Shown one piece after another: positions 44,335 to 64,000 of a stretch of 64,000 nt of DNA (its first letter is position 1; each line of letters starts with the position of its first letter). The stretch comes from Paramoeba atlantica. Lineage: Eukaryota > Protista > Discosea. The stretch is from the NCBI GenBank assembly GCA_977017575.1, contig CDRNVI010000056.1, positions 384,884 to 448,883 of the forward strand, written 5' to 3'. Below the pieces are notes generated by a model. It searched no databases and had not been told where the DNA came from. It saw only the letters and a list, made by a program, of their open reading frames with translations. Made by a program: the position numbers and the translations under genes.

Positions 44335-45743
44335 TTTTTGCGATTCTCTTCGTTCACAATCGTGTGGCCGCTTTTGGGCGCGCGCGAGAGACGCAACGTG
44401 AATCGCAGAAGCAATGGTACATTTTAGGGTATTTTCTTTGCTGAAATGAAGTCTTTTTGGCCTGTGTAGCAGATGACGTTTTGGCGGCAGAGACGGTGAA
44501 TGGGTAGATGGCCGTGCGCGTGTCAAATGTAAAAGCCCGAAAAGTGTACCGCTTTTTAGCGCATCATATCTTAAAATTCAAAATGACGTCAGATTTACCT
44601 CTTTCCGCCTGCACGGTGAAGGGGGGTTTTCAGATATCTCTGGACGCGACGTTTGCATGACTTCCGTGCATGGCGTGCGTCGATTGCGAAACGCCGAACC
44701 AGCAAGCTACACCTCCTGAGTGGTCGTGCTTCGCGCGATATTTTCTGTAGAGATAGAGTTTTTCCGTTAGTCAGTATGATTGCGAAACAAAACGTGGGTT
44801 TCGCCAGTCCACTTTTTGTCCGTTCTTCCCTGAATCAAATCTTAAACAATTTTAACCCTTTCTAATTGATGAGCGTTCTGATCGCTCGTGCTTTGCTCTG
44901 ATATTTGCTTTGGGCACTCTTTTCACATGATTTCACTGATACTATAAGACTTCCCCTCTTCTAACGCAAGAATTTGTTGTCATCGGACATTCTTTTAGTC
45001 AAATCAATGCTTGATTGCACAAGCTTCCTGCATCTCAAGGGGGGGGTTGTATTTCTCTACACCTCTTTCACTTTTCACCTGCTCTTCCAAGCAACAGGGT
45101 CACAGGGCGCGCGCGTATTGTAATAGTGTGGTGGAAAAACGTCGGTTTCACACGAAACTCGCATCCACCGTGCGACCCCATTCCGTGGAGAACGATCTTT
45201 GTTTTCTTCGATCGCACTGATTCCGTTAGATGCACAGAGCGTGATTTCACGTGAATCGAACAATTCCGCGAGATGTTTTACTTGGGGCAAAGCAGGGCAG
45301 CACATGAACAATGAAAACAGGACGCGCAATGGCGCGGAACACCTTCCACGTGACACCTTCCGAAACGCGTTCTGCACAATCCAGGTATAAAACAACGAAT
45401 TTCTTCGCCCGGCCGTTGCAAAGACCCACCCCTTACCGATAGATTTCGTAGCTCTGCTCTAAACGTGAACGCATCGTGCTCAACCTCTCTTCCCGACTAT
45501 GTCATCGCAAAAATTGTATGTGTCACTTCTGGGCCGTTCGCATGGGCATGTGTTGGGCACACTCAAACCCCCATTGCATTCATCAATGCGACCTACGGTT
45601 GTGAATGTCGCCTTGCTTGGGGGGGGGGGGGGCTGTAAGGATCGTTAAGCGAGCGAAATCGGGGAGTTTCCATTATGACATGAATTAGCAAGGTAAACTG
45701 CACCGCTATGGACACACAAAATTCGAGACACACCACGACGGAA

Positions 45744-45824
45744 GCGTCCATACCCAAGTGGTTAAGGGGCCTGACTTGAAATCAGGTGTGTTCTCAGGCG
45801 CAGGTTCGAACCCTGCTGGGCGCG
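45744..45824 (+). tRNA. tRNA-Ser(TGA) copy 18, variable-arm variant
   Basis: TTCTCACGC changed to TTCTCAGGC. Confidence 0.88.
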
Positions 45825-46620
45825 TTTTTGCGATTCTCTTCGTTCACAATCGTGTGGCCGCTTTTGGGCGCGCGCGAGAGACGCAACGTGAATCGCAGAA
45901 GCAATGGTACATTTTAGGGTATTTTCTTTGCTGAAATGAAGTCTTTTTGGCCTGTGTAGCAGATGACGTTTTGGCGGCAGAGACGGTGAATGGGTAGATG
46001 GCCGTGCGCGTGTCAAATGTAAAAGCCCGAAAAGTGTACCGCTTTTTAGCGCATCATATCTTAAAATTCAAAATGACGTCAGATTTACCTCTTTCCGCCT
46101 GCACGGTGAAGGGGGGTTTTCAGATATCTCTGGACGCGACGTTTGCATGACTTCCGTGCATGGCGTGCGTCGATTGCGAAACGCCGAACCAGCAAGCTAC
46201 ACCTCCTGAGTGGTCGTGCTTCGCGCGATATTTTCTGTAGAGATAGAGTTTTTCCGTTAGTCAGTATGATTGCGAAACAAAACGTGGGTTTCGCCAGTCC
46301 ACTTTTTGTCCGTTCTTCCCTGAATCAAATCTTAAACAATTTTAACCCTTTCTAATTGATGAGCGTTCTGATCGCTCGTGCTTTGCTCTGATATTTGCTT
46401 TGGGCACTCTTTTCACATGATTTCACTGATACTATAAGACTTCCCCTCTTCTAACGCAAGAATTTGTTGTCATCGGACATTCTTTTAGTCAAATCAATGC
46501 TTGATTGCACAAGCTTCCTGCATCTCAAGGGGGGGGGTTGTATTTCTCTACACCTCTTTCACTTTTCACCTGCTCTTCCAAGCAACAGGGTCACAGGGCG
46601 CGCGCGTATTGTAATAGTGT

Positions 46621-48117
46621 CTTGTTGACTCTTACCGCTATCTGGGAAACATTCAGGATTCAGGCGTTTCTTCGCCAGTAAAAGACCGCTTAAGGCTCAC
46701 CTGGGCCGCATTTCGGAAGCTCAAGGGCATTTGGGACTCGCCACTGAGTGCATCAACAAAACTGCGTTTGTTTGATTGCCTCGTTTACCCAATCATGACC
46801 TTTGGTGCCGCTTCGCTTTCCATATCCAACAAAATGCTTCGGCAAACAGAAGTTGAGCTCAATATGATGCGAAGATTTTGCTGTAATTGTGCTAAATTGG
46901 ACGAGTTTGGACACTGCTACCCTATCGAGTCACTTTATTGCGGCACTCCTCGTTTCTCCACCGTACATCGCGTTAGTCGGGCTAAAATTGTTGGTCACAT
47001 TCTAAGGCACTCATTCATGTTTCGAGATCTTATCCAGTGGAAATGCAGCGATAGGAAACGAAATCTCTCACCAAGCGAAGCTTGCTTTCACGATCTGGAC
47101 ATTACCGAAGAACAAGCCCTCGTATACGCTCAGGATCGAGATCACTGGAAAAAGTTATGTGAAGATTTAAAGGTAGCACTCGAACCGCTTCCGGATTACG
47201 AAAGACTCTCTTCTCCTAGATGGAAAAGTAAACATGCCCACGCCTTGAAGCAAGATACGCCTTACGATTTGCAATTTGTCGAAGAAAGTTCTGATCCTTT
47301 TCCATTAAAAGATGATGAGGTTCACTTCTATATTGATGGTTCAGTCCGTGCCTTGCGGGTGACAAACGAGATCAGAGCAGGTGCTGGAATTGTTGTGCTT
47401 CAACGATGGACAACCGATAAATGTTTTTCCTTAACATTAGATGTTGATAGTGCCGAGCAAGCTGAGGCTGAATCTTTTCGAGAGGCGCTTAAAAGAATAC
47501 CGGACGGAGCAAAAGATATCGTAGTACACACAGATTCGTTCTATGTGTGGAACTTCTTTCATCACGTTCGCATCCGGAGACGGGTAATAGGGTATGACCG
47601 CGTCGTCAACAGAAACATTCTACAAGATATAGATCATCAGGTGCGGAAACTAAAATCTCAGAATGTTAATTTGTATGTGTGCAAAGTTAAATCTCATAAT
47701 GGGAACGAATATAACGACAAAGCTGATGTCTTGGCTCTTTCGGCGTCACGAAGGCCGTTAAAATCACAAGAGGCAAAGAGGTTGAAGACGACAAAAGCTC
47801 CTTCTTCTTCTTCTTCTGACCCAATATCCTCGCCAGAAGCGACACTCATATTGCGCCCAAGAAGGAATGTTGACACTATTTCATCCAAACGCAAGAATAA
47901 CACTACTGCAAGTGGGGCTCTATCCAAAAAGGGTAGCTCACTGTCTGGAGAGCCTGGAGTGAAACCGTCTGAAAAAACGAATGCTATGATCCTGAGTAGG
48001 CCTGATGTCGGTAAAGAAAAAAGTTGCAAGGGAAATAGGGAGTCTGATAAGATCGTGGAAACAAAGGGAAAGAAGTCTCCCAAGAGAAAGAAGGCTTCAC
48101 GAAAATTAGAACAGTAG
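46621..48117 (+). CDS. Partial ORF: RT C-terminus/thumb + RNase H + Lys/Ser-rich tail
   Basis: Frame is open from the first inserted base (LVDSYRYLG...TWAAFRKLKGIW...TKLRLF, AQDRDHWKKL). RNase H motifs FYIDGS, QAEAE, VHTDS, KSHNG, NDKAD are intact. Confidence 0.9.
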   Translation, partial: LVDSYRYLGNIQDSGVSSPVKDRLRLTWAAFRKLKGIWDSPLSASTKLRLFDCLVYPIMTFGAASLSISNKMLRQTEVELNMMRRFCCNCAKLDEFGHCYPIESLYCGTPRFSTVHRVSRAKIVGHILRHSFMFRDLIQWKCSDRKRNLSPSEACFHDLDITEEQALVYAQDRDHWKKLCEDLKVALEPLPDYERLSSPRWKSKHAHALKQDTPYDLQFVEESSDPFPLKDDEVHFYIDGSVRALRVTNEIRAGAGIVVLQRWTTDKCFSLTLDVDSAEQAEAESFREALKRIPDGAKDIVVHTDSFYVWNFFHHVRIRRRVIGYDRVVNRNILQDIDHQVRKLKSQNVNLYVCKVKSHNGNEYNDKADVLALSASRRPLKSQEAKRLKTTKAPSSSSSDPISSPEATLILRPRRNVDTISSKRKNNTTASGALSKKGSSLSGEPGVKPSEKTNAMILSRPDVGKEKSCKGNRESDKIVETKGKKSPKRKKASRKLEQ

Positions 48118-48168
48118 TATCTTTAATCGGTTTTTAACCGATCTATTAGGATAGGATAGGATAGGAGG
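46621..48168 (+). mobile_element. 5'-truncated non-LTR retrotransposon (RTE-like, with RNase H) inserted in the array spacer
   Basis: 13-bp TSD ATTGTAATAGTGT (46608-46620 and 48169-48181); short 3' UTR with hairpin ATCGGTT-TTT-AACCGAT and an (AGGAT)3 tail. Confidence 0.93.
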
Positions 48169-48796
48169 ATTGTAATAGTGTGGTGGAAAAACGTCGGTTT
48201 CACACGAAACTCGCATCCACCGTGCGACCCCATTCCGTGGAGAACGATCTTTGTTTTCTTCGATCGCACTGATTCCGTTAGATGCACAGAGCGTGATTTC
48301 ACGTGAATCGAACAATTCCGCGAGATGTTTTACTTGGGGCAAAGCAGGGCAGCACATGAACAATGAAAACAGGACGCGCAATGGCGCGGAACACCTTCCA
48401 CGTGACACCTTCCGAAACGCGTTCTGCACAATCCAGGTATAAAACAACGAATTTCTTCGCCCGGCCGTTGCAAAGACCCACCCCTTACCGATAGATTTCG
48501 TAGCTCTGCTCTAAACGTGAACGCATCGTGCTCAACCTCTCTTCCCGACTATGTCATCGCAAAAATTGTATGTGTCACTTCTGGGCCGTTCGCATGGGCA
48601 TGTGTTGGGCACACTCAAACCCCCATTGCATTCATCAATGCGACCTACGGTTGTGAATGTCGCCTTGCTTGGGGGGGGGGGGGGGCTGTAAGGATCGTTA
48701 AGCGAGCGAAATCGGGGAGTTTCCATTATGACATGAATTAGCAAGGTAAAGTGCACCGCTATGGACACACAAAATTCGAGACACACCACGACGGAA

Positions 48797-48877
48797 GCGT
48801 CCATACCCAAGTGGTTAAGGGGCCTGACTTGAAATCAGGTGTGTTCTCACGCGCAGGTTCGAACCCTGCTGGGCGCG
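48797..48877 (+). tRNA. tRNA-Ser(TGA) copy 19
   Basis: Identical to copy 1. Confidence 0.95.
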
Positions 48878-50288
48878 TTTTTGCGATTCTCTTCGTTCAC
48901 AATCGTGTGGCCGCTTTTGGGCGCGCGCGAGAGACGCAACGTGAATCGCAGAAGCAGTGGTACATTTTAGGGTATTTTCTTTGCTGAAATGAAGTCTTTT
49001 TGGCCTGTGTAGCAGATGACGTTTTGGCGGCAGAGACGGTGAATGGGTAGATGGCCGTGCGCGTGTCAAATGTAAAAGCCCGAAAAGTGTACCGCTTTTT
49101 AGCGCATCATATCTTAAAATTCAAAATGACGTCAGATTTACCTCTTTCCGCCTGCACGGTGAAGGGGGGTTTTCAGATATCTCTGGACGCGACGTTTGCA
49201 TGACTTCCGTGCATGGCGTGCGTCGATTGCGAAACGCCGAACCAGCAAGCTACACCTCCTGAGTGGTCGTGCTTCGCGCGATATTTTCTGTAGAGATAGA
49301 GTTTTTCCGTTAGTCAGTATGATTGCGAAACAAAACGTGGGTTTCGCCAGTCCACTTTTTGTCCGTTCTTCCCTGAATCAAATCTTAAACAATTTTAACC
49401 CTTTCTAATTGATGAGCGTTCTGATCGCTCGTGCTTTGCTCTGATATTTGCTTTGGGCACTCTTTTCACATGATTTCACTGATACTATAAGACTTCCCCT
49501 CTTCTAACGCAAGAATTTGTTGTCATCGGACATTCTTTTAGTCAAATCAATGCTTGATTGCACAAGCTTCCTGCATCTCAAGGGGGGGGTTGTATTTCTC
49601 TACACCTCTTTCACTTTTCACCTGCTCTTCCAAGCAACAGGGTCACAGGGCGCGCGCGTATTGTAATAGTGTGGTGGAAAAACGTCGGTTTCACACGAAA
49701 CTCGCATCCACCGTGCGACCCCATTCCGTGGAGAACGATCTTTGTTTTCTTCGATCGCACTGATTCCGTTAGATGCACAGAGCGTGATTTCACGTGAATC
49801 GAACAATTCCGCGAGATGTTTTACTTGGGGCAAAGCAGGGCAGCACATGAACAATGAAAACAGGACGCGCAATGGCGCGGAACACCTTCCACGTGACACC
49901 TTCCGAAACGCGTTCTGCACAATCCAGGTATAAAACAACGAATTTCTTCGCCCGGCCGTTGCAAAGACCCACCCCTTACCGATAGATTTCGTAGCTCTGC
50001 TCTAAACGTGAACGCATCGTGCTCAACCTCTCTTCCCGACTATGTCATCGCAAAAATTGTATGTGTCACTTCTGGGCCGTTCGCATGGGCATGTGTTGGG
50101 CACACTCAAACCCCCATTGCATTCATCAATGCGACCTACGGTTGTGAATGTCGCCTTGCTTGGGGGGGGGGGGGGGGCTGTAAGGATCGTTAAGCGAGCG
50201 AAATCGGGGAGTTTCCATTATGACATGAATTAGCAAGGTAAAGTGCACCGCTATGGACACACAAAATTCGAGACACACCACGACGGAA

Positions 50289-50369
50289 GCGTCCATACCC
50301 AAGTGGTTAAGGGGCCTGACTTGAAATCAGGTGTGTTCTCACGCGCAGGTTCGAACCCTGCTGGGCGCG
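50289..50369 (+). tRNA. tRNA-Ser(TGA) copy 20
   Basis: Identical to copy 1. Confidence 0.95.
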
Positions 50370-51776
50370 TTTTTGCGATTCTCTTCGTTCACAATCGTGT
50401 GGCCGCTTTTGGGCGCGCGCGAGAGACGCAACGTGAATCGCAGAAGCAATGGTACATTTTAGGGTATTTTCTTTGCTGAAATGAAGTCTTTTTGGCCTGT
50501 GTAGCAGATGACGTTTTGGCGGCAGAGACGGTGAATGGGTAGATGGCCGTGCGCGTGTCAAATGTAAAAGCCCGAAAAGTGTACCGCTTTTTAGCGCATC
50601 ATATCTTAAAATTCAAAATGACGTCAGATTTACCTCTTTCCGCCTGCACGGTGAAGGGGGGTTTTCAGATATCTCTGGACGCGACGTTTGCATGACTTCC
50701 GTGCATGGCGTGCGTCGATTGCGAAACGCCGAACCAGCAAGCTACACCTCCTGAGTGGTCGTGCTTCGCGCGATATTTTCTGTAGAGATAGAGTTTTTCC
50801 GTTAGTCAGTATGATTGCGAAACAAAACGTGGGTTTCGCCAGTCCACTTTTTGTCCGTTCTTCCCTGAATCAAATCTTAAACAATTTTAACCCTTTCTAA
50901 TTGATGAGCGTTCTGATCGCTCGTGCTTTGCTCTGATATTTGCTTTGGGCACTCTTTTCACATGATTTCACTGATACTATAAGACTTCCCCTCTTCTAAC
51001 GCAAGAATTTGTTGTCATCGGACATTCTTTTAGTCAAATCAATGCTTGATTGCACAAGCTTCCTGCATCTCAAGGGGGGGGGTTGTATTTCTCTACACCT
51101 CTTTCACTTTTCACCTGCTCTTCCAAGCAACAGGGTCACAGGGCGCGCGCGTATTGTAATAGTGTGGTGGAAAAACGTCGGTTTCACACGAAACTCGCAT
51201 CCACCGTGCGACCCCATTCCGTGGAGAACGATCTTTGTTTTCTTCGATCGCACTGATTCCGTTAGATGCACAGAGCGTGATTTCACGTGAATCGAACAAT
51301 TCCGCGAGATGTTTTACTTGGGGCAAAGCAGGGCAGCACATGAACAATGAAAACAGGACGCGCAATGGCGCGGAACACCTTCCACGTGACACCTTCCGAA
51401 ACGCGTTCTGCACAATCCAGGTATAAAACAACGAATTTCTTCGCCCGGCCGTTGCAAAGACCCACCCCTTACCGATAGATTTCGTAGCTCTGCTCTAAAC
51501 GTGAACGCATCGTGCTCAACCTCTCTTCCCGACTATGTCATCGCAAAAATTGTATGTGTCACTTCTGGGCCGTTCGCATGGGCATGTGTTGGGCACACTC
51601 AAACCCCCATTGCATTCATCAATGCGACCTACGGTTGTGAATGTCGCCTTGCTTGGGGGGGGGGGCTGTAAGGATCGTTAAGCGAGCGAAATCGGGGAGT
51701 TTCCATTATGACATGAATTAGCAAGGTAAAGTGCACCGCTATGGACACACAAAATTCGAGACACACCACGACGGAA

Positions 51777-51857
51777 GCGTCCATACCCAAGTGGTTAAGG
51801 GGCCTGACTTGAAATCAGGTGTGTTCTCACGCGCAGGTTCGAACCCTGCTGGGCGCG
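51777..51857 (+). tRNA. tRNA-Ser(TGA) copy 21
   Basis: Identical to copy 1. Confidence 0.95.
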
Positions 51858-52924
51858 TTTTTGCGATTCTCTTCGTTCACAATCGTGTGGCCGCTTTTGG
51901 GCGCGCGCGAGAGACGCAACGTGAATCGCAGAAGCAATGGTACATTTTAGGGTATTTTCTTTGCTGAAATGAAGTCTTTTTGGCCTGTGTAGCAGATGAC
52001 GTTTTGGCGGCAGAGACGGTGAATGGGTAGATGGCCGTGCGCGTGTCAAATGTAAAAGCCATAAAAGTGTACCGCTTTTTAGCGCATCATATCTTAAAAT
52101 TCAAAATGACGTCAGATTTACCTCTTTCCGCCTGCACGGTGAAGGGGGGTTTTCAGATATCTCTGGACGCGACGTTTGCATGACTTCCGTGCATGGCGTG
52201 CGTCGATTGCGAAACGCCGAACCAGCAAGCTACACCTCCTGAGTGGTCGTGCTTCGCGCGATATTTTCTGTAGAGATAGAGTTTTTCCGTTAGTCAGTAT
52301 GATTGCGAAACAAAACGTGGGTTTCGCCAGTCCACTTTTTGTCCGTTCTTCCCTGAATCAAATCTTAAACAATTTTAACCCTTTCTAATTGATGAGTGTT
52401 CTGATCGCTCGTGCTTTGCTCTGATATTTGCTTTGGGCACTCTTTTCACATGATTTCACTGATACTATAAGACTTCCCCTCTTCTAACGCAAGAATTTGT
52501 TGTCATCGGACATTCTTTTAGTCAAATCAATGCTTGATTGCACAAGCTTCCTGCATCTCAAGGGGGGGGGTTGTATTTCTCTACACCTCTTTCACTTTTC
52601 ACCTGCTCTTCCAAGCAACAGGGTCACAGGGCGCGCGCGTATTGTAATAGTGTGGCGGAAAAACGTCGGTTTCACACGAAACTCGCATCCACCGTGCGAC
52701 CCCATTCCGTGGAGAACGATCTTTGTTTTCTTCGATCGCACTGATTCCGTTAGATGCACAGAGCGTGATTTCACGTGAATCGAACAATTCCGCGAGATAT
52801 TTTACTTGGGGCAAAGTAGGGCAGCACATGAACAATGAAAACAGGACGCGCAATGGCGCGGAAGACCTTCCACGTGACACCTTCCGAAACGCGTTCTGCA
52901 CAATCCAGGTATAAAACAACGAAT

Positions 52925-54627
52925 AGAAACGAAGAAAGAGGAAGAAAGAGGAAGAAAGAGGAAGAAAGAGGGAGAAAGAGGAAGAAAGAGGAAGAAAGAG
53001 GAAGAAAGAGGAAGAAAGAGGAAGAAAGAGGAAGAAAGAGGAAGAAAGAGGAAGAAAGAGGAAGAAAGAGGAAGAAAGAGGAAGAAAGAGGAAGAAAGAG
53101 GAAGAAAGAGGAAGAAAGAGGAAGAAAGAGGAAGAAAGAGGAAGAAAGAGGAAGAAAGAGGAAGAAAGAGGAAGAAAGAGGAAGAAAGAGGAAGAAAGAG
53201 GAAGAAAGAGGAAGAAAGAGGAAGAAAGAGGAAGAAAGAGGAAGAAAGAGGAAGAAAGAGGAAGAAAGAGGAAGAAAGAGGAAGAAAGAGGAAGAAAGAG
53301 GAAGAAAGAGGAAGAAAGAGGAAGAAAGAGGAAGAAAGAGGAAGAAAGAGGAAGAAAGAGGAAGAAAGAGGAAGAAAGAGGAAGAAAGAGGAAGAAAGAG
53401 GAAGAAAGAGGAAGAAAGAGGAAGAAAGAGGAAGAAAGAGGAAGAAAGAGGAAGAAAGAGGAAGAAAGAGGAAGAAAGAGGAAGAAAGAGGAAGAAAGAG
53501 GAAGAAAGAGGAAGAAAGAGGAAGAAAGAGGAAGAAAGAGGAAGAAAGAGGAAGAAAGAGGAAGAAAGAGGAAGAAAGAGGAAGAAAGAGGAAGAAAGAG
53601 GAAGAAAGAGGAAGAAAGAGGAAGAAAGAGGAAGAAAGAGGAAGAAAGAGGAAGAAAGAGGAAGAAAGAGGAAGAAAGAGGAAGAAAGAGGAAGAAAGAG
53701 GAAGAAAGAGGAAGAAAGAGGAAGAAAGAGGAAGAAAGAGGAAGAAAGAGGAAGAAAGAGGAAGAAAGAGGAAGAAAGAGGAAGAAAGAGGAAGAAAGAG
53801 GAAGAAAGAGGAAGAAAGAGGAAGAAAGAGGAAGAAAGAGGAAGAAAGAGGAAGAAAGAGGAAGAAAGAGGAAGAAAGAGGAAGAAAGAGGAAGAAAGAG
53901 GAAGAAAGAGGAAGAAAGAGGAAGAAAGAGGAAGAAAGAGGAAGAAAGAGGAAGAAAGAGGAAGAAAGAGGAAGAAAGAGGAAGAAAGAGGAAGAAAGAG
54001 GAAGAAAGAGGAAGAAAGAGGAAGAAAGAGGAAGAAAGAGGAAGAAAGAGGAAGAAAGAGGAAGAAAGAGGAAGAAAGAGGAAGAAAGAGGAAGAAAGAG
54101 GAAGAAAGAGGAAGAAAGAGGAAGAAAGAGGAAGAAAGAGGAAGAAAGAGGAAGAAAGAGGAAGAAAGAGGAAGAAAGAGGAAGAAAGAGGAAGAAAGAG
54201 GAAGAAAGAGGAAGAAAGAGGAAGAAAGAGGAAGAAAGAGGAAGAAAGAGGAAGAAAGAGGAAGAAAGAGGAAGAAAGAGGAAGAAAGAGGAAGAAAGAG
54301 GAAGAAAGAGGAAGAAAGAGGAAGAAAGAGGAAGAAAGAGGAAGAAAGAGGAAGAAAGAGAGGAAGAAAGAGGAAGAAAGAGGAAGAAAGAGGAAGAAAG
54401 AGGAAGAAAGAGGAAGAAAGAGGAAGAAAGAGGAAGAAAGAGGAAGAAAGAGGAAGAAAGAGGAAGAAAGAGGAAGAAAGAGGAAGAAAGAGGAAGAAAG
54501 AGGAAGAAAGAGGAAGAAAGAGGAAGAAAGAGGAAGAAAGAGGAAGAAAGAGGAAGAAAGAGGAAGAAAGAGGAAGAAAGAGGAAGAAAGAGGAAGAAAG
54601 AGGAAGAAAGAGGAAGAAAGAGGAAGA
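52925..54627 (+). repeat. (GAAGAAAGAG)n 10-bp purine-only tandem repeat, ~170 copies
   Basis: Perfect units from 52931 except one GGAGAAAGAG near the start and a 2-nt (AG) phase shift at 54361. Confidence 0.99.
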
Positions 54628-54772
54628 TACCGATGACGATGAATTAACCCGCATACTTGCTATTTTGTTAGCAGACTGCTCACTAAAACAAGCAGTAAGC
54701 CTAGCAGTTAATATCACTGGCCACAGTAAAAATAAAATATATGCAATGGCACTTGCGCTACAAAAATCATGA
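54628..54772 (+). CDS. rsmI: 3' fragment of 16S rRNA C1402 2'-O-methyltransferase (bacterial)
   Basis: DTDDDELTRILAILLADCSLKQAVSLAVNITGHSKNKIYAMAL resembles the proteobacterial RsmI C-terminal helix (LLxELPLKxAAxLAAxIxGxxKNxLY); 5' part is replaced by the repeat. Confidence 0.65.
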
Positions 54773-54917
54773 ACGCCTGCTTTGCAATAATTGGTCATTT
54801 TTGTGACGGATATCATGAATCATCAATGACAATAGGCAATGGAAATAGCATAATGGCCCATTGTATATAAACTCAAAAACAACTGCAAAATACAACTTAT
54901 TGAAAGAGAGTAATGTT

Positions 54918-56315
54918 ATGGCAAATAGTGCAAGCAATTCGATCATCGTACGTTTAGAGTTAGCCAATCGTACCAATTCACTATCACAGGTAACCCAAGC
55001 GATCAGTGATGCTAATGCCACAGTGGGTGCGATTGATTTAATTAAGCCAGGACGCAATGCCAATGTACGTGATTTCACGATCTTTACTAATGGTGAAGAA
55101 CACACGCAACAAATCATTGCACAATTAAAATCAATGCCAGATGTGACATTTTTAACAATGTCAGATCGCACCTTCTTAATGCACATCGGTGGCAAAATTG
55201 AAGTAAATAGTAAAACCCCGATCAAAAATCGTGATGATCTATCGATGGCGTACACCCCGGGTGTGGCTAGAGTATGTATGGCCATTCATCATGATCAAGA
55301 CAAAGCCTTTAAATTAACGATTAAACGCAACACCGTTGCCATCGTCTCCGATGGAACTGCCGTATTAGGGTTAGGTGATATCGGCCCGAAAGCAGCAATG
55401 CCAGTGATGGAAGGCAAAGCCATGCTATTTAAAGGCTTTGCCGGTGTCGATGCATTTCCTATTTGTTTAGACACCAAAGATACCGATGCGATTGTTGATA
55501 CCGTCAAACGGATCGCACCTGGCTTTGGTGGCATCAATTTAGAAGATATTTCAGCGCCGCGCTGTTTTGAAATCGAAGACCGGTTAAAACGCGAATTAGA
55601 TATCCCTGTATTTCACGATGATCAACACGGCACTGCGGTTGTGTTTACTGCAGCGTTGATCAATGCGTTAAAACTTGTGAAAAAACGCCCTGAAAAGCTG
55701 AAAGTAGTGGTCGCTGGCGTTGGTGCTGCCGGTGTTGCTTGTACTAAGATGTTACAAAGTTTAGGCGTTACCAATGTCATTGGCTGTGATCGCAAAGGCG
55801 CATTAGTCAAAACCCGTGATGATTTAAACCCAGCTAAACAAGCTTATGCAAACTCAACTAATCCAAAACAACAAAGTGGTGCAATCAGTGATGTAATTAA
55901 AGGAGCCGATGTGTTTGTTGGTTTATCCGGTCCTAACGTATTAACGGTTGATGACTTAAAAGCCATGGCGAAAAAACCAATTGTATTTGCTATGTCGAAC
56001 CCAACACCTGAAATCTTGCCAGAAGAAGCAGCACCCTATGTTGAGATCATGGCTACCGGTCGCAGTGATTATCCCAACCAAATTAACAACGTCTTAGCAT
56101 TTCCAGGGATTTTTCGTGGCGCATTAAACGTACGTGCAACTGATATTAACGATGTGATGAATTTAGCCGCAGCTCATGCAATTGCAAATGTCATCGATGA
56201 ACATACCTTAAATCCAGACTACATTATTCCTAGTGTATTCGATACATCCGTTGCAACCAAAGTCGCTGAGGCAGTGATGCAAGCAGCATATGACAGCGGT
56301 GTAGCTAAGAAATAA
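54918..56315 (+). CDS. NAD(P)-dependent malic enzyme with N-terminal ACT domain
   Basis: DLSMAYTPGVA, VSDGTAVLGLGDIG, MEGKA, GGINLEDI, FHDDQHGT, GVGAAG, TGRSDYPNQINN; ACT-like N-terminus; ATG 54918 after a GAGAG RBS. Confidence 0.93.
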   Translation: MANSASNSIIVRLELANRTNSLSQVTQAISDANATVGAIDLIKPGRNANVRDFTIFTNGEEHTQQIIAQLKSMPDVTFLTMSDRTFLMHIGGKIEVNSKTPIKNRDDLSMAYTPGVARVCMAIHHDQDKAFKLTIKRNTVAIVSDGTAVLGLGDIGPKAAMPVMEGKAMLFKGFAGVDAFPICLDTKDTDAIVDTVKRIAPGFGGINLEDISAPRCFEIEDRLKRELDIPVFHDDQHGTAVVFTAALINALKLVKKRPEKLKVVVAGVGAAGVACTKMLQSLGVTNVIGCDRKGALVKTRDDLNPAKQAYANSTNPKQQSGAISDVIKGADVFVGLSGPNVLTVDDLKAMAKKPIVFAMSNPTPEILPEEAAPYVEIMATGRSDYPNQINNVLAFPGIFRGALNVRATDINDVMNLAAAHAIANVIDEHTLNPDYIIPSVFDTSVATKVAEAVMQAAYDSGVAKK

Positions 56316-57812
56316 TCACTTCCATCGATAAGATATCCGGTCAGTATTCCCCATCCAATAATTTAATATTGGTGACAAACATAATAATAGAAATGCTACC
56401 ACCAATGCGGCTACCCCTAATTGGGTAAATGCATGGCTGTAATTCGGGTTGGTGACTAACGGCGATGCACTGTGACTGGTACCGGCTGCATAATTAGAAA
56501 AGAAACTGGCAAATACGGCAGCAACACCCGTATTTAGCAATAGACTACCCATACACAGACTTTGCCAACGCGCAGGGATCAGCAACCCAACCATCGCATA
56601 ACCAATCGGGCTAATCAGCAATTCTGCTAACGCTTCTAATACATACGTTGAAAAGACCCAAGAAAATGATACATAGCCATTATTAGCGAAGGCAATTCCA
56701 AGTGGCAAAATTAATAAACCAAGCCCACCCAAGGTCATTCCCATGGTAAATTGAATAGGCACTGAAAAACGGCCACTGCCCTGCTCACGCGCACGCATAA
56801 AATAACGCGCCAATAAAGGGCCACCAATAAAAATAGTAACCGCATTAATGTTAGACAACCAACCGGGAGCAATCTGCCAACCAAAAAGGTGTAAGTTAAC
56901 GTTATTTTTGGCGAAAAACATCAAACTCATCGGTGATAATTGGTAAATAATCCAAAACATTTGCGCACATAATAATAAGACTAAAAATGTTAAAAAGCGT
57001 TTGCGTTCTTGCTGCTGGTGGCTCATTGCCCCATAAAATAAGACAATGACAATCACTGCACCGGCTAATAAAATAACACCATCACCGATCGCTACATGAT
57101 GTAATAGAAAATACAATGCTGGCACTAATGCAAGTAATATCGCAATACCAATGGCATTTCTTCGAAACTGAACAGGTTTATGATCACACTGAGATAGGGT
57201 GGTTTGTTTGTCACGTAAATAGTTCCACCCAAGTGATAAAACCATAATCGTCACCAGATTAAATAACGATGCAAATAGAAATAACCAGGTGTAATTATCG
57301 TGTAATTGAAAATACCCAGATAAGGTAAACCCCATCAGAAAACCAATATTCATTGCACCATAATTCCAGAAAAACGCTGTTTCACGCTTTGAAACATCAT
57401 CGCTGCTAAATAGCTGTGACAGTAGCATATTGAGGCATGTCACTAAGGTACCAGTGCCAATTAACACACCAGCCAATCCCCAGTAAAACAGTTGCAGACT
57501 ACCGTCTACTAATGCAATTGTGCCTAATAATTGGAATATTATGCCAAATAACACCATGGCACGATAGCTTAAATAACGTCCGCCAAGGTAACCGGATAAT
57601 TGATGCAATGCAAAGTTCAGTGCGAAATACACCCCAGCAACTAAATTAGCATCGTGTTCACTAAACCCTAAACGACTATTCATGTATAACACTAGCGATG
57701 CAAACAACACGGCAAAACTAATCGTGCTAAACAGTTGCACACTATATAAAAAGCCAAAGCCGTGTGGCATCGACAAAAATGATTTTTTAACGGGTTGCGT
57801 TGTCGTCGTCAT
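56316..57812 (-). CDS. POT/PTR-family peptide MFS transporter
   Basis: Multiple TM helices; SGYLGGRYLS, RETAFFWNYGAMNIG, AELLISPIGYAMV motifs. Confidence 0.88.
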   Translation of the reverse strand: MTTTTQPVKKSFLSMPHGFGFLYSVQLFSTISFAVLFASLVLYMNSRLGFSEHDANLVAGVYFALNFALHQLSGYLGGRYLSYRAMVLFGIIFQLLGTIALVDGSLQLFYWGLAGVLIGTGTLVTCLNMLLSQLFSSDDVSKRETAFFWNYGAMNIGFLMGFTLSGYFQLHDNYTWLFLFASLFNLVTIMVLSLGWNYLRDKQTTLSQCDHKPVQFRRNAIGIAILLALVPALYFLLHHVAIGDGVILLAGAVIVIVLFYGAMSHQQQERKRFLTFLVLLLCAQMFWIIYQLSPMSLMFFAKNNVNLHLFGWQIAPGWLSNINAVTIFIGGPLLARYFMRAREQGSGRFSVPIQFTMGMTLGGLGLLILPLGIAFANNGYVSFSWVFSTYVLEALAELLISPIGYAMVGLLIPARWQSLCMGSLLLNTGVAAVFASFFSNYAAGTSHSASPLVTNPNYSHAFTQLGVAALVVAFLLLCLSPILNYWMGNTDRISYRWK

Positions 57813-58011
57813 TGCAATATCTCCTATTGTGCCGCAATAGCCGATATTTATCGTAAGGATAGCGATTACTCAAGTCAAGTCACCTATACTCTTCTCGTTT
57901 TAAATTTAGGCTTTGTTGGCTGCGTCTTCTCACAAAAGTCATGTATTTCAATACACTCCTTTTGATTCAAAGACTTGCCGCCTCGCCTAAATTCAAAACG
58001 CTTTGAGTATA

Positions 58012-58776
58012 TTACAATACCACTGCAATCAGTGCCATTAGCGCAATTCCTAAACCAAAGTAACACACACTAACCATTGAGGCATCACCAACGTTACTAC
58101 TTAATGCTTCATCCATAGCAACATATAGGAATGTACCTGCAGCAATCGCACTAAATATCGCTAACATTAATTGCCCCTGTGGCGTGGTGAGATACATATG
58201 TAAACCATATCCCATTAACATTCCTAATGGGGTCATCCAGGCAAAGAAAATCACAGCGTACCACAATTGATTTTTGGATAATTGGCAACGACGCATATTA
58301 ATGAGTAAAGCAAAGCTATCTGCACCTTTGTGTGCAATGATAGCGGTTGCAATGGCAACTGTATTAGCAACACTATCACTAATCCCCAACGCACCACCTA
58401 AAATGATAGAGTGAATACACAATACCAATAATAATAAATACGGTTGTAAATGCCGATGAATTTGTGATGAAGTATGTTGACAAATACGCAATGCGGCTTG
58501 TCGTAATAAATATAATAACCACACGGTGACAATCGCAATCACAAAGGTATATGGATAAGTGACACGACCTAATGCATCATGTAAACCCTGCTCTGCACTG
58601 GGTAACATGTGGATGATTGCTGCACTTAAGAAAATACCACGAGCAAAGGCTTCACCATCGATCAACCAACGGCGTGCATTGGGTTTGTCTCCCAATACAA
58701 TTGGCCAAGCACCGCCGGCCACACCAACTGCAAAAATGATTAATGCTAAGCTAATCATCATATTGTTTGTCTGCAA
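58012..58776 (-). CDS. ZIP-family Zn/Fe permease
   Basis: GIFLSAAIIHMLP, IHSIILGGALG, AIIAHKG, AGTFLYVA motifs. Confidence 0.88.
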   Translation of the reverse strand: MQTNNMMISLALIIFAVGVAGGAWPIVLGDKPNARRWLIDGEAFARGIFLSAAIIHMLPSAEQGLHDALGRVTYPYTFVIAIVTVWLLYLLRQAALRICQHTSSQIHRHLQPYLLLLVLCIHSIILGGALGISDSVANTVAIATAIIAHKGADSFALLINMRRCQLSKNQLWYAVIFFAWMTPLGMLMGYGLHMYLTTPQGQLMLAIFSAIAAGTFLYVAMDEALSSNVGDASMVSVCYFGLGIALMALIAVVL

Positions 58777-58806
58777 AACCTACCGTAAAAAACAGCTCTC
58801 GAGATA

Positions 58807-59229
58807 TTATTCTCGCTCAGCATTACGATCATCAAAGTCATTTTCCTGTCGATCACCACGTTCAATATGCAGGTGGGCATTCTCAACGTCATCACGATCA
58901 ACATCAAGACGACCACTATCATCTTTTAACAAGGCTTGATCAGCATCATCTTCTGGGAGCACACTGACCGATGGTAATGGATCAACTTCATCATCAGGAT
59001 GATAATTATGCTCGATCACATCTGGCTCAAATTCACCACGTTGTGCATCATATTCAGCATACTGATCACCAGCAACCACTTGCGTAGCTCCTCTGGTTGG
59101 ATTAATCACTGCTTGCTGCGCTCGCTCAACCGTGGCAGATGATAACTGAGTACCCGAATGATTATCACTGGTATCACACCCGGTTACCAGAATAATTAAT
59201 GCAATAATAAATACTAATTTATGCCTCAT
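58807..59229 (-). CDS. Hypothetical acidic lipoprotein
   Basis: Signal peptide with lipobox VTGC; start overlaps the tatD stop; Asp/Glu-rich C-terminus. Confidence 0.7.
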   Translation of the reverse strand: MRHKLVFIIALIILVTGCDTSDNHSGTQLSSATVERAQQAVINPTRGATQVVAGDQYAEYDAQRGEFEPDVIEHNYHPDDEVDPLPSVSVLPEDDADQALLKDDSGRLDVDRDDVENAHLHIERGDRQENDFDDRNAERE

Positions 59230-60025
59230 GTTGCGCCCCTCCTATGGCATCATTAAACAACCTAATATAATTCTCTGTCGTCTTTTGTGCAATTAATTCT
59301 AAGCTTACCCCACGTAATGTGGCAATATAGTCTGCCACATGATAAACATAAGCCGGCTGATTGGCCTTACCCCGATACGGTACGGGGGCCAAATAGGGTG
59401 AATCTGTTTCAATTAATAAACGCTCTAGTGGAATGGTTTTAGCAACAGCTTGCAATTCGGTTGCATTTTTAAAGGTAACAATACCAGAAAACGAAATATA
59501 ACACCCCATCTCTATTGCTTGTGCTGCCATTTCTTGGGTTTCGGTAAAACAATGCATCACCCCACCAACGCGATCAATACCTTGTTCACGCATGATTGCA
59601 ATTGTATCTTCACGGGCATTACGCGTATGAATGATCACTGGCTTTTGTAGCGCTATCGCCGCTTGAATATGAGTACGAAACCGATTTTGTTGCCAGGTTA
59701 AATCACCTTGTTGACGAAAATAATCTAAACCAGTCTCACCAATGGCTACCACATTGGGATGTTGTGCTAGTTCAACTAATTCATCCACCGTAACTTCATG
59801 GGGATCATCTTGTTCATTGGGATGAACACCAACTGATGCGCTCACATTAGCAAATGTATCCGCAATACGTAACATATTCGGCAAATCACGTAAATTAACC
59901 GCAACGCATAAGCAATGGTGCACATGGTTAGCACACGCATTAGTTAATACATTTTCCATTTTCCCGTCAAACGCAGTGAGGTCGAGCATATCAAGATGAC
60001 AATGTGAGTCGACTAATTGTAGCAT
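59219..60025 (-). CDS. tatD: TatD-family metal-dependent hydrolase (YcfH-like)
   Basis: DSHCHL, GVHP, IGETGLDY, IHTR, GVMHCF, ETDSPYLAP motifs. Confidence 0.95.
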   Translation of the reverse strand: MLQLVDSHCHLDMLDLTAFDGKMENVLTNACANHVHHCLCVAVNLRDLPNMLRIADTFANVSASVGVHPNEQDDPHEVTVDELVELAQHPNVVAIGETGLDYFRQQGDLTWQQNRFRTHIQAAIALQKPVIIHTRNAREDTIAIMREQGIDRVGGVMHCFTETQEMAAQAIEMGCYISFSGIVTFKNATELQAVAKTIPLERLLIETDSPYLAPVPYRGKANQPAYVYHVADYIATLRGVSLELIAQKTTENYIRLFNDAIGGAQHEA

Positions 60026-60038
60026 AGTGGGGTTGTCA

Positions 60039-60393
60039 TTAAATCGTGTCCGTTGGTTTATCACTGTCTAACATACCAGCTAAGGCTAATTCTATTTTTT
60101 CACGCACAGTACGTCCCAGTTTACCTTGTAGTTGTACACCAATACCACGTTGACTACTGCCAGATTGTTGCGAAACTACCCAAACTATTTTTGCTTGCAA
60201 GCGATGTGGTTCCGATTCATCTAATAACCGTAAGGATAAAAAAAATTAAATCACCCAATGCAAACGTGCGCGTGGTTGGAATGAATAACCCACCCCCTGT
60301 TACAAATTTCATATAAGCACGATACAATTTTTCTTTATCAGTCAGTTCCAATGACAAAACGGGGGTATCAGCAGCAGGTTGTTTATCCATCAT
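60039..60393 (-). CDS. pilZ: PilZ (type IV pilus assembly protein), +1 frameshift in A8 run at 60238-60245; absent from the ORF track
   Basis: LSLELTDKEKLYRAYMKFVTGGGLFIPT...LGD, continuing after removal of one base as LIFLSLRLLDESEP...KIVWV...GIGVQL...KIELALAGML; conserved position between holB and tatD. Confidence 0.85.
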
Positions 60394-60422
60394 GTATCAA
60401 CTTATCATGCCTTACATTACTG

Positions 60423-61449
60423 TTAATTAGCTAGACGATACCACTTCACCAATAAACTTTCCAATAATAATTGCTGATTGGGGTTGGCTGCACTATTCAA
60501 CATACCACGTGTGTTGGTTAATTGATCAATAAATGTAAATAGCTTACAAATAAAATGAGATACATCGATATCAGGTACTACTAATGTTGACCAACTAGCC
60601 GGTAAACACTGCGCATGACCATGTAATTGCCACACTAAACCACAACAGGCACGGATCCACTGTGTGATTAGATCATCGATGGCTTGCGTCATCCAAGTTT
60701 GCGCAACCATCACTGGCGAACACTGTTGCTGAAAGACCATTTGCAGCGCCTCTAACCACTGTGTCATTTGTTCAGTTAATTGCGGATCACTAGCGATTGC
60801 CAATGCCGTTAATGGTGCTCCATCACTGACAGTTAACCATTGTTGACACTGGGTTAATGACACATCCTGATTGGCTGCTTGTAACGTTTGCTGTAACCAC
60901 GCACTGCTTTTTTCAAGTGGCGGCACTTGGAATACCACGTGTATACAACGACTGCGTAACGTAGCTGGTAAACTCATCGGTTGTGCAGTGACTAACAACA
61001 ACACTGTATTGTCTCCTGGCTCTTCTATTATTTTTTAATACACTGTTAACCGCTGCTGTTGTTAAACAATCCGCCGGTTCAATCACTACTACGCGAAAAC
61101 CGGCATGCTGCGGGGTTTGCTGTAACGATTGTAACATTACACGCACTTGATCAATTTTAATTGTGCTGGCGTTTTGTTCTGGGTAAACGTGGTAATAATC
61201 AGGATGTGTACCTGCTTGTTGCCAACGACACGCCTGGCAATGCCCGCAGGGTACTGTTTCATCCTGTTGTTCACACAACAATATCGCGGCACAATAGCGA
61301 GCTACTCTCTGTTTACCTAAACCCGGTAACCCGCTTAATAATAGGGCATGAGGCATCGTTGCTGTTTGCTTGGCTTGAACCAATTGGGTGAGGTCCATGC
61401 CACGCATTGATACAGGGGGCAATATAGTGTGATCAATCTCAATACTCAT
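60423..61449 (-). CDS. holB: DNA polymerase III subunit delta', +1 frameshift in T6 run at 61031-61036
   Basis: HALLLSGLPGLGK, PCGHCQAC, THPDY, IKIDQVR; removing one base restores NSVLKIIEEP and joins to LPATLRSRC. Confidence 0.92.
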
Positions 61450-62078
61450 AACACCTCTGCTAATACCGTTTCAATTGATTGCTGTACCGCTGATAAACTG
61501 GCACTGGCATCGATCACGCGAAAGCGTTGTGGTATTTGACGTGCGCGTTCACGATAACACTGATGCACTCTTTCAAAAAACGCAGTATGTTCTTGCTCAA
61601 TACGGTCCATATCACCCCGAACAGCAACACGTTGTTTACCCACAGCAACCGATGCATCCAACAATAATGTTAAATCAGGCCAACAATCACCGTGTAACCA
61701 TTGTGCTAAATACTCAATGACATCTGTAGATAATTCCCTGCCTGCGCCTTGATAAGCAAATGTTGCATCGGTAAACCGATCACAAACAACCACTTTACCC
61801 TGTTGCAATGCTGGCTGGATAACCATTTCTAAATGTTGTGCACGTGCAGCAAAGGCTAACAATAATTCGGTATTAGCAGTTACTACTTCTGCTTGAGGTT
61901 GTAGGATCACATCACGGATCTGTTCTGCAACCGGTGTCCCACCAGGTTCACGTGTCACAATATAAGAACGTTGTTGTGCGTCTAAATAACGGGTAATCGA
62001 TTCAATCGCGGTTGATTTACCAACCCCTTCGCCCCCTTCCAATGTTAAGAAAAATCCAGATGCAACAGTGTCATTCAT
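61446..62078 (-). CDS. tmk: Thymidylate kinase
   Basis: TLEGGEGVGKST, TREPGGT, CDRFTDATFAYQG, DRIEQE motifs. Confidence 0.97.
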   Translation of the reverse strand: MNDTVASGFFLTLEGGEGVGKSTAIESITRYLDAQQRSYIVTREPGGTPVAEQIRDVILQPQAEVVTANTELLLAFAARAQHLEMVIQPALQQGKVVVCDRFTDATFAYQGAGRELSTDVIEYLAQWLHGDCWPDLTLLLDASVAVGKQRVAVRGDMDRIEQEHTAFFERVHQCYRERARQIPQRFRVIDASASLSAVQQSIETVLAEVL

Positions 62079-63148
62079 GATGATGGGCCTTGCGCTTGAG
62101 TTGAGTTAAGCTGATAGGTTACCACAGCTTGGCGATGCGCTTTAAGTGTTTTTGAAAAATGATGCGATCCATCACCTTTGGCAACATAGTAATAATAATC
62201 CGTTTGTGCCGGATGTAATGCTGCATCCAGTGCATCAGCGCTGACTAATGCAATCGGCGTTGGTGGCAAACCTCTATGCAAGTAGGTATTATACGCCGTT
62301 TTCTGGCGTAGATCGGCACGTGTTAGTTTGACTTTGGGTTGCACTAATTGACGATTAATACCGTATAACACAGCCGCATCAATTTGCAACGGCATACGAT
62401 CGCGCAATCGATTCAACATCACACTGGCAATCAAACGCCTTTCATCTGCAATGCTAGCTTCCTTTTCAATTAATGATGCCAAGATTAAGGCATAATATGG
62501 GGTTGGATATGGCAAATTAGTATCACGAGTTTGCCAAGCATCAGCTAACTGTTGTTGCATGCGTTGATAAGCCCGTTGCAAAAACTCATAGGCAGTGGTT
62601 CCCTTTGGAAACGCATAAGTATCTGGATAAAACAACCCTTCAAGGCTTGAGTGCGATACTGAAAATTCGGTGCTAATCGTTTTGAGTAATTGTTCTGTTG
62701 AATCGGTATGGGTTAAATTGGGATTTGCCCTCACTGCATTGAGTAATTCTGTTATTGTCCAGCCCTCAACAAGCGTTAACAAATGCTGCAGTACATCGCC
62801 TTGGGTCAATTGATCTAATACCATTGTAGGTGTTGCTTGATACGATAAAGCATACTCTCCCGCTTGTAAATCATGGGTTCGATTAGTAAAGCATGCATAC
62901 AACACAAAATAATTTGGATGGGTTAAATAACCACGTTGTTGTAACTGTTGTGCAACCTGCGACATACTCATGCCAGGTAATAATTCAATGAGTACCGTTT
63001 CATCATTGTTAGTTGTCATTGTTGTTGGCGTTAATAACGGTGTGTGCAGGAAATAGGTAAAACGTATGATATGTGACAATACAAAGCCGATTAAGATAAG
63101 TCCAATGCCAAGCAACACGTATCCCAAGAAGACTGTTAACTTTCGCAT
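62075..63148 (-). CDS. mltG: Endolytic transglycosylase MltG (YceG)
   Basis: N-terminal TM, LQAGEY, TLVEGWT, LEGLFYPDTY, ILASLIEKE, MPLQID, YNTYLHRGLPPTPI motifs. Confidence 0.96.
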   Translation of the reverse strand: MRKLTVFLGYVLLGIGLILIGFVLSHIIRFTYFLHTPLLTPTTMTTNNDETVLIELLPGMSMSQVAQQLQQRGYLTHPNYFVLYACFTNRTHDLQAGEYALSYQATPTMVLDQLTQGDVLQHLLTLVEGWTITELLNAVRANPNLTHTDSTEQLLKTISTEFSVSHSSLEGLFYPDTYAFPKGTTAYEFLQRAYQRMQQQLADAWQTRDTNLPYPTPYYALILASLIEKEASIADERRLIASVMLNRLRDRMPLQIDAAVLYGINRQLVQPKVKLTRADLRQKTAYNTYLHRGLPPTPIALVSADALDAALHPAQTDYYYYVAKGDGSHHFSKTLKAHRQAVVTYQLNSTQAQGPSS

Positions 63149-63999: not shown

Positions 64000-64000
64000 C

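What the first reader, a model, noticed from the sequence alone, without database searches (positions are those of the whole stretch)
52909..54627. (GAAGAAAGAG)n: candidate non-canonical telomere added onto a broken array unit
Seen: the last unit stops mid-spacer (...ACAACGAAT), followed by a short variant seed AGAAAC, one variant unit and then ~170 essentially perfect 10-mers, purine-only on the strand pointing away from the genes, with a single phase slip. No TTAGGG tract is present. The seed CGAAGAAA is the reverse complement of TTTCTTCG, which would have come next in the unit. Knowledge: telomerase products show proximal variants, distal homogeneity and G-rich-strand-outward polarity; AG-only telomeres are known from Dictyostelium and cryptophyte nucleomorphs. 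Inference: a new 10-bp telomere motif, or a healed break. A plain microsatellite or a base-calling artefact is also possible.
Basis: partly seen in the sequence, partly recalled or inferred. Interest (0 to 1): 0.75.

Follow-up and report, generated by a model that had tools for sequence, protein, structure and literature searches.

The report
Ten-base purine telomere with chimeric tail
A 1.7-kb run of GAAGAAAGAG very probably marks a true chromosome end of a kinetoplastid-like protist that seems to use this purine-only 10-base repeat in place of TTAGGG, and the bacterial DNA that follows it in this contig is most likely a library or assembly chimera.

Summary
Window 52931-54627 holds 169.5 copies of GAAGAAAGAG with no pyrimidine, one variant unit and one 2-base insert. 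It abuts a truncated unit of a 1.49-kb tRNA-Ser array.

The tract is not terminal in the contig. The remaining 9.37 kb is bacterial DNA, 99.96% identical to a complete gammaproteobacterial MAG, and it starts in the middle of rsmI. I read this tail as a chimeric read.

Across the assembly, 18 long arrays of the 10-mer (0.19-9.7 kb) all lie at or next to contig ends with the purine strand 3'-outward. One 0.8-Mb contig is capped at both ends. Internal copies are at most 121 bp.

The assembly holds two eukaryotes:
- The 10-mer occurs only on contigs C1-C105. These contigs have about 41-50% GC and an 18S that matches the kinetoplastid primer Kineto14F.
- TTTAGGG arrays occur only on AT-rich contigs from C138 upward, which carry a different 18S.

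So the 10-mer is very probably the telomere of the kinetoplastid-like organism. Telomerase is unproven: no TERT or template RNA was found. The "healed break" and "seed" ideas remain untested or weak.

This scan reached the same telomere reading before on other DNA of this genome (s1-369897, s1-366998).

The parts
19251..52924 (+). Subtelomeric tandem array of about 22 units of 1.49 kb, each with one tRNA-Ser(UGA) gene. The last unit is truncated after ...ACAACGAAT. One unit carries a 1.55-kb LINE fragment (46621-48168).
   Evidence: The LINE was also noted by s1-396072.
52925..52930 (+). Six-base filler AGAAAC between the truncated unit and the first perfect repeat.
   Evidence: The string occurs nowhere else in the window.
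52931..54627 (+). (GAAGAAAGAG)n array of 169.5 copies, purine-only on the + strand, with its 3' end pointing away from the protist genes. Candidate telomere.
   Evidence: Genome-wide context.
52971..52980 (+). The single variant unit GGAGAAAGAG (A2 to G), 41 bases into the array. The same variant occurs in the arrays of C77 and C46.
54361..54362 (+). Two-base insert (AG) that shifts the repeat phase.
54628..64000 (.). Foreign tail of gammaproteobacterial DNA running to the contig end. Genes: rsmI 3' fragment, malic enzyme, peptide permease, ZIP transporter, TatD-family hydrolase, holB, tmk, mltG, pabC. Interpreted as the tail of a chimeric read.
54629..54772 (+). The last 47 codons of rsmI. 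The gene is complete (about 280 codons) in the matching MAG, so the join falls inside a gene.
61036..61036 (.). One extra T in a homopolymer relative to the MAG, which splits holB into two ORFs. Typical single-read error.

Best explanation
The 1.7-kb (GAAGAAAGAG)n tract is the terminal repeat (telomere) of one chromosome end of a kinetoplastid-like protist, here called organism A. Its purine strand runs 5' to 3' towards the terminus.

Inferred, not shown: the repeat is most likely made by a telomerase whose RNA template carries a little more than one copy of CUCUUUCUUC. At this end it was laid down on, or has long sat beside, a subtelomeric tRNA-Ser tandem array that it cuts within the spacer.

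The 9.37 kb that follows is not part of the chromosome. It is a fragment of a co-sampled gammaproteobacterium, joined to the telomere tip in a chimeric molecule or read (ligation or amplification chimera). The assembler then used that read to extend the contig.
For: Shown, terminal position and polarity:
- There are 18 arrays of 190 bp to 9.7 kb. Fourteen run to within 34 bases of a contig end.
- All 18 have the purine strand 3'-outward (chance 2^-18).
- C43 (799,619 bp) is capped at both ends.
- Every internal copy is 121 bp or shorter.
- The flanking unique sequences and junction phases differ between ends, except for the allelic pair C42/C77.

Shown, no rival telomere repeat in organism A:
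- TTAGGGx4 occurs only once, inside a TTTAGGG array.
- TTTAGGG arrays are confined to contigs C138 and above. In the sampled rDNA loci of those contigs the flanks are 24-31% GC and the 18S differs (74-80% identity in the blocks that align).
- 10-mer contigs are all C105 or below. The sampled A loci have 41-50% GC, A has its own tandem rDNA whose 18S matches Kineto14F 30/30, and A holds all the RNA-polymerase large-subunit genes.

Shown, the tail is foreign:
- It is 99.957% identical over 9,377 bp to OZ220716.1.
- The join falls mid-rsmI with at most 3 bases of microhomology.
- The differences are two homopolymer indels, one of which breaks holB, plus one or two substitutions.
- The tail ends at the contig end.

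Shown, a parallel case: the C77 array is followed by 2.47 kb carrying a SusD/TonB-receptor gene pair, typical of Bacteroidota. Its allele C42, with the same junction and 1 mismatch in 178 bp, ends in the array.

The high accuracy of the bacterial flank shows the read that spans the array is accurate, which argues against a base-calling artefact.

Substitution variants are biased towards the proximal side.
Against: - No TERT was found. PF12009 gave only a false hit, which is exportin-T, and PF21399 gave nothing. The same searches also failed to give a significant hit on the TTTAGGG organism, so their sensitivity is poor.
- No template RNA was identified.
- No reads were available, so 'contig end equals molecule end' is an inference.
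- For C56 itself no second haplotig without the tail was found.
- Two ends (C16, C43 left) carry an unexplained inverted (GGAGGAAGAG)n block beyond the array.
- Other agents report decayed symbiont-derived genes at chromosome ends of this genome, so real capture of bacterial DNA does occur there.
Confidence: 0.75

Rival explanations
1. The 10-mer is a subterminal satellite, and the true telomere (TTAGGG-like or other) lies beyond it but is missing from every contig, for example because it cannot be sequenced or assembled.
For: Contig ends are not proof of molecule ends. No TERT or template was found. GA-rich tracts are hard for some platforms (general knowledge).
Against: None of the 18 arrays continues into any other repeat. 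TTAGGG is absent from the assembly apart from one spot inside a TTTAGGG array. TTTAGGG belongs to another organism. In four cases foreign DNA is joined directly to the 10-mer, as expected if molecules end there.
Confidence: 0.1
2. The bacterial DNA was really captured in vivo at this chromosome end (a very recent gene transfer), so the 10-mer tract is now internal.
For: An abrupt join at a chromosome end. Other agents report older symbiont-derived genes at telomeres of this genome (s1-377453 and s1-377544, not checked here).
Against: The tail is 99.96% identical to the MAG with an intact bacterial gene order. The differences are read-type homopolymer errors. The tail stops at the contig end with no new telomere and no protist DNA beyond it. 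A second end carries DNA with genes typical of a different phylum, while its allele lacks it.
Confidence: 0.05
3. The arrays are true chromosome ends but are maintained without telomerase, by recombination or rolling-circle copying, or by a retrotransposon-type reverse transcriptase.
For: No TERT was detected. The genome is rich in retrotransposons that build short-period arrays, for example the 18-bp x122 array at window 16934-19113 and note s1-389380.
Against: Near-perfect 10-base homogeneity across 18 ends on unrelated flanks and in varying phases is what a short fixed template gives. The TERT search was insensitive. No retroelement is associated with the arrays.
Confidence: 0.12
4. The tract is a sequencing or base-calling artefact, or a plain microsatellite.
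For: It is a low-complexity homopurine tract. Two ends show a systematically different 10-mer on the opposite arm.
Against: Left and right ends give exactly complementary sequences. Short copies lie inside well-assembled unique DNA. The same read is about 99.96% accurate in its bacterial part. Strict end location and polarity are not properties of microsatellites.
Confidence: 0.03

Closest known systems
Canonical kinetoplastid telomeres, (TTAGGG)n made by telomerase (general knowledge)
   Same: Terminal tandem short repeat with the purine-rich strand 3'-outward, kilobase-scale variable length, a few variant units near the base, and short interstitial copies.
   Different: The unit is 10 bases, contains no T, and has no G-runs longer than two, so it cannot form G-quadruplexes. 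The duplex is homopurine/homopyrimidine. No TERT or template was found here.
AG-only telomeres of Dictyostelium (A-G1-8) and of cryptomonad nucleomorphs
   Same: Purine-only outward strand.
   Different: Those repeats are irregular or of a different length, and they occur in unrelated lineages. This one is a strict 10-mer in a kinetoplastid-like organism.
Non-canonical long telomere units, such as the Allium 12-mer and the budding-yeast 8-25-mers (general knowledge)
   Same: Replacement of the ancestral TTAGGG-type unit by a longer lineage-specific unit, presumably through a change in the template RNA.
   Different: Those units keep T/G-rich character. For them telomerase and template have been shown; here they have not.
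Chimeric long reads (end-to-end ligation or amplification chimeras) that extend a contig tip
   Same: Abrupt switch of organism, a join inside a gene with 0-3 bases of microhomology, tail length within one read, single-read error profile, and an allelic contig without the tail (C42 versus C77).
   Different: Nothing. This part of the locus is an ordinary artefact and should be trimmed.

Membership tests
Telomere (chromosome-end repeat) | Tandem short repeat located at the physical ends of chromosomes | tested here: met
   Fourteen of 18 long arrays reach a contig end, and the other four are followed only by foreign or inverted DNA. No long internal array exists. This is assembly-level evidence only; reads were not available.
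Telomere (chromosome-end repeat) | Fixed strand polarity, with the G/purine-rich strand 3' towards the end at both ends of a chromosome | tested here: met
   18 of 18 arrays point outward. C43 carries the C-strand array at its left end and the G-strand array at its right end.
Telomere (chromosome-end repeat) | No other terminal repeat in the same genome | tested here: met
   TTAGGG is absent. TTTAGGG arrays occur only on contigs C138 and above, which belong to a second, AT-rich eukaryote with a different 18S.
Telomerase-made telomere | A TERT gene in the genome | tested here: inconclusive
   PF12009 gave only 18-bit hits on C53/C15 that are exportin-T. PF21399 gave nothing. The searches gave no significant hit on the TTTAGGG organism either, so they are insensitive.
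Telomerase-made telomere | An RNA whose template is complementary to the repeat | not tested
   A template of 11-16 bases is too short to find by pattern in 45 Mb. An unchecked first-reader lead exists (s1-377636).
Telomerase-made telomere | Variant repeats concentrated at the base of the array | tested here: met
   The 21 phase-preserving substitution events fall 9, 6, 3, 3 by quartile. Leaving out the noisy C43R array, 7 of 11 lie in the first quartile. Support is modest.
Telomere (chromosome-end repeat) | Bal31 sensitivity, 3' overhang, and length heterogeneity among molecules | not testable with these tools
   Needs DNA or raw reads.
De novo telomere addition (healed break) | Telomere joined to sequence that is internal in the intact allele, with a G-strand-like primer at the break | tested here: inconclusive
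   The array unit is truncated. No allele with a longer array ending elsewhere was found; C96 and C106 hold array units but no telomere. The 7-base match at the break is C-strand-like on the + strand, which is the wrong strand.
Assembly or library chimera | Abrupt change of source organism with near-identity to an independently assembled genome | tested here: met
   99.957% over 9,377 bp to OZ220716.1, which continues on both sides of the matched stretch.
Assembly or library chimera | Junction supported by one or very few reads | not testable with these tools
   Indirect only: the tail ends at the contig end, it carries homopolymer errors, and the parallel end C77 has an allele C42 without a tail.
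Interstitial satellite or microsatellite | Flanked on both sides by DNA of the same genome | tested here: not met
   The distal flank is bacterial.

The most novel reading that the evidence does not exclude
A kinetoplastid lineage has abandoned TTAGGG and caps its chromosomes with a strict homopurine 10-mer that cannot form G-quadruplexes. The repeat is maintained by a highly divergent telomerase or by no telomerase at all, for example a retroelement-derived reverse transcriptase or recombination, and is bound by a new set of end-binding proteins.
Probability: 0.15. Interest if true: 0.9.

Novelty: new variant of a known kind. Interest (0 to 1): 0.62.

Why it matters
To my knowledge, kinetoplastids studied so far use TTAGGG, and their telomere biology (base J, TRF, VSG expression sites) is built on that repeat. 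A strict purine-only 10-mer would mean a changed telomerase template, new duplex- and overhang-binding specificities, and ends that cannot form G-quadruplexes but can form triplex DNA. It would be a natural experiment in how a telomere system is replaced.

On the practical side, this locus shows that the last 9.4 kb of contig C56 and the last 2.5 kb of C77 are bacterial chimeras that should be trimmed.

Tried and rejected
- TERT search with PF12009 and PF21399. The only hits on organism A were exportin-T. I treat the result as uninformative rather than as absence.
- Paraflagellar-rod family PF05149: no hit. It gives no help with identity beyond hinting at a possibly aflagellate organism.
- Literature. 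No paper in the searchable library links this 10-mer to telomeres. The Perkinsela/Paramoeba genome paper does not mention telomeres.
- Metagenome scan for five tandem units. It returned 8 contigs with 53-202-bp tracts in mixed orientation. Three were checked against G000 and are unrelated to organism A, so they give no independent replicate.
- Simple fold-back explanation for the inverted (GGAGGAAGAG)n blocks. I rejected it because their irregularities do not mirror the adjacent arm.
The two-organism split therefore rests on contig partition, rDNA and its flanks, and the RNA-polymerase genes.
- The 'seed' as a telomerase primer: rejected on strand grounds.

Full report
**1. Observation**

The tract is exactly as described.
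- Tandem Repeats Finder gives 52931-54627, period 10, 169.5 copies, 99% matches.
- A unit-by-unit walk finds only one variant unit (GGAGAAAGAG at 52971), one 2-base insert (54361) and a final partial unit.
- The 1,697 bases contain no C or T.

Upstream lies a tandem array of about 22 units of 1.49 kb, each with a tRNA-Ser(UGA) gene.
- In all 21 earlier copies, ...ACAACGAAT is followed by TTCTTCGCCCGG.
- In the last copy it is followed by AGAAAC and then the repeat.

However, each unit has five sites with a C-strand-like 7-mer, so a break next to one is a coincidence of about 2-3%. The match is also on the wrong strand to prime outward synthesis.

**2. The tract is not the end of the sequence**

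The window is G000:C56:384884-448883, and the contig ends with the window. From 54628 onward the DNA is bacterial. The genes are a 47-codon 3' piece of rsmI, a malic enzyme, a peptide permease, a ZIP transporter, a TatD-family hydrolase, holB, tmk, mltG and pabC.
- A protein from this stretch is 100% identical to one in OZ220716.1, a 2.45-Mb gammaproteobacterial MAG chromosome.
- At the DNA level, window 54624-64000 matches that record at 99.957% over 9,377 bp.
- The MAG has the full rsmI and continues on both sides of the matched stretch.
- True homology starts at 54628, with at most 3 bases of microhomology.
- The differences are one substitution and two homopolymer length changes. One of these splits holB in the window.

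This is the profile of a single unpolished read. I conclude that a chimeric molecule or read (telomere tip joined to a bacterial fragment) was used to extend the contig tip.

**3. The same 10-mer elsewhere in the assembly**

G000 is 45.7 Mb in 248 contigs. It has 4,111 matches to three tandem units, against 2 for the control pattern read backwards. Two boundary patterns listed every array edge. I then fetched the ends and measured the arrays.

| Class | Contigs | Detail |
|---|---|---|
| Right ends, G-strand on + | C14, C25, C41, C43, C45, C46, C60, C92, C105 | Arrays run to, or within 34 bases of, the contig end; C14 is 9.7 kb |
| Left ends, C-strand on + | C13, C29, C42, C47, C80 | Arrays start at base 1-11 |
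| Outward-pointing, with extra DNA beyond | C56 | 9.4 kb of gammaproteobacterial DNA |
| | C77 | 2.47 kb with a SusD-like gene and a TonB-dependent receptor, a gene pair typical of Bacteroidota |
| | C16, C43 left | 0.8-1.0 kb of an inverted variant repeat |

- All 18 arrays have the purine strand 3'-outward.
- C43 (0.8 Mb) is capped at both ends.
- Internal copies are 30-121 bp.
- C77 and C42 share the same subtelomere (1 mismatch in 178 bp) and the same junction. C42 ends in the array while C77 has the bacterial tail. This is direct evidence that such tails are not part of the chromosome.

**4. Is there another telomere repeat?**

TTAGGGx4 occurs once, inside a (CCCTAAA)n array at the start of C205. 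TTTAGGG-type arrays are abundant, but the first is on C138 and all boundaries lie on C142-C239. All 10-mer sites lie on C1-C105.

The two contig sets are different organisms.

| Feature | Set A (C1-C137) | Set B (C138-C248) |
|---|---|---|
| End repeat | GAAGAAAGAG | TTTAGGG |
| GC (sampled loci) | 41-50% | rDNA flanks 24-31%, 18S itself 38% |
| 18S | Own gene; tandem rDNA on C76, also on C26 and C59, 50% GC | About 2.1 kb, dispersed copies; holds the best 18S hits |
| 18S 5' end | GTTTCAAGGA type, exact 30/30 match to Kineto14F | GTCTTAAAGA type |
| RNA-polymerase large subunits | Three long intron-less genes, in near-identical pairs (C53/C15, C34/C69, C44/C66), probably haplotigs | None |

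- The two 18S genes share only 74-80% identity in the blocks that align.
- Kineto14F is the kinetoplastid-targeted primer quoted in PMC11771631.

So TTTAGGG belongs to a second, partly binned eukaryote. My data contradict that.

**5. Fine structure of the arrays**

In 42.6 kb of arrays, 21 phase-preserving substitutions are biased towards the proximal side (9, 6, 3, 3 by quartile). The 191 indel-type events, mostly 1 base, rise distally (21, 50, 55, 65), as expected from thin coverage at contig tips. Junction flanks and starting phases differ between ends, which fits independent addition of one templated repeat.

**6. Mechanism**

- Shown: terminal location, polarity, exclusivity and homogeneity.
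- Inferred: synthesis by telomerase from a template holding a little more than one CUCUUUCUUC.

I could not find TERT. PF12009 gave only weak hits, and on organism A these are exportin-T. PF21399 gave none. The TTTAGGG organism produced no significant hit either, so I do not read this as absence. A telomerase-independent route stays open at about 12%.

**7. Unexplained**

Beyond the arrays of C16 and C43 left lie blocks of (GGAGGAAGAG)n, which is the canonical unit with A2 and A5 changed to G. They are inverted relative to the array and found nowhere else. Their irregularities do not mirror the adjacent arm, so they are not a faithful fold-back. They may be end-to-end chimeras with another purine-3'-out terminal array, in vivo fusions, or strand-specific miscalls. 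The A2-to-G change also occurs as single units in C56, C77 and C46.

**8. Comparison and novelty**

The array behaves like a telomere and meets the positional, polarity and exclusivity criteria. The enzymatic criteria are untested. From general knowledge, the closest systems are:
- kinetoplastid TTAGGG telomeres;
- the AG-only telomeres of Dictyostelium and cryptomonad nucleomorphs;
- lineage-specific long units in yeasts and Allium.

No paper in the searchable library links this 10-mer to telomeres. I rate it a new variant of a known kind. The scan reached the same reading before on other contigs (s1-369897; s1-366998, which matches my terminal 1,157-bp C105 array).

This window adds four points:
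- a read-accuracy control, from the bacterial flank;
- the chimera diagnosis;
- the allelic C42/C77 comparison;
- the separation of the two eukaryotes.

**9. Verdict**

The telomere reading is very probable (0.75 including the chimera diagnosis). The healed-break and seed ideas are unsupported. Telomerase remains unproven.

Noticed in passing
window 54628-64000 (C56:439511-448883): Contig tip is 9.37 kb of gammaproteobacterial DNA, 99.96% identical to MAG OZ220716.1. It should be trimmed as a chimera. holB is split by a 1-base homopolymer error at 61036.
   Followed up: yes
L028 (G000:C77:73844-76309) versus L034 (G000:C42:1-2620): A second telomere array is followed by 2.47 kb carrying a truncated SusD-like gene and a TonB-dependent receptor. 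The allelic end C42 has the same junction but ends in the array.
   Followed up: yes
L032 (G000:C16:1-824) and L035 (G000:C43:1-1035): Inverted blocks of a variant 10-mer, GGAGGAAGAG, lie beyond the canonical arrays and occur nowhere else in the assembly. They are not a faithful mirror of the adjacent arm. Origin unknown.
   Followed up: partly
G000 contigs C138-C248, e.g. L041 (C205:1-1628) and L043-L048: A second eukaryote is mixed into the assembly. It has AT-rich rDNA flanks (24-31% GC in the sampled loci), (TTTAGGG)n at contig ends, and many dispersed 2.1-kb 18S copies 40-70 kb apart whose loci (18S plus flanks) are 95-98% identical. No RNA-polymerase large-subunit genes were found on these contigs.
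   Followed up: partly
G000 C53/C15, C34/C69, C44/C66: Housekeeping genes of organism A come in near-identical pairs on different contigs, so the assembly probably holds both haplotypes.
   Followed up: no
window 32326-42845: Eight consecutive array units carry a tRNA-Ser with a C-to-G change in the T-arm (Rfam 50.8 versus 61.2 bits). One further unit (45744) has a different single change.
   Followed up: partly
window 46621-48168: A 1.55-kb insertion in one tRNA-array unit, flanked by a duplication of about 13 bases.
   Followed up: partly
window 16934-19113: A tandem array of about 122 copies of an 18-base unit (CCATCGTTTTTGGTAAGA) just upstream of the tRNA array.
   Followed up: no
window 13920-16296: A pogo-like transposase (DDE_1 plus CENP-B N-terminal domain, 14396-16140, minus strand) is flanked by short G-rich 17-base repeats at 13920-13992 and 16247-16296.
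   Followed up: no
G000 C1, C4, C11, C45, C48, C60, C65, C67: Short interstitial copies (30-121 bp) of the 10-mer lie inside unique DNA of organism A. Two identical ones on C65 are 5.1 kb apart.
   Followed up: partly
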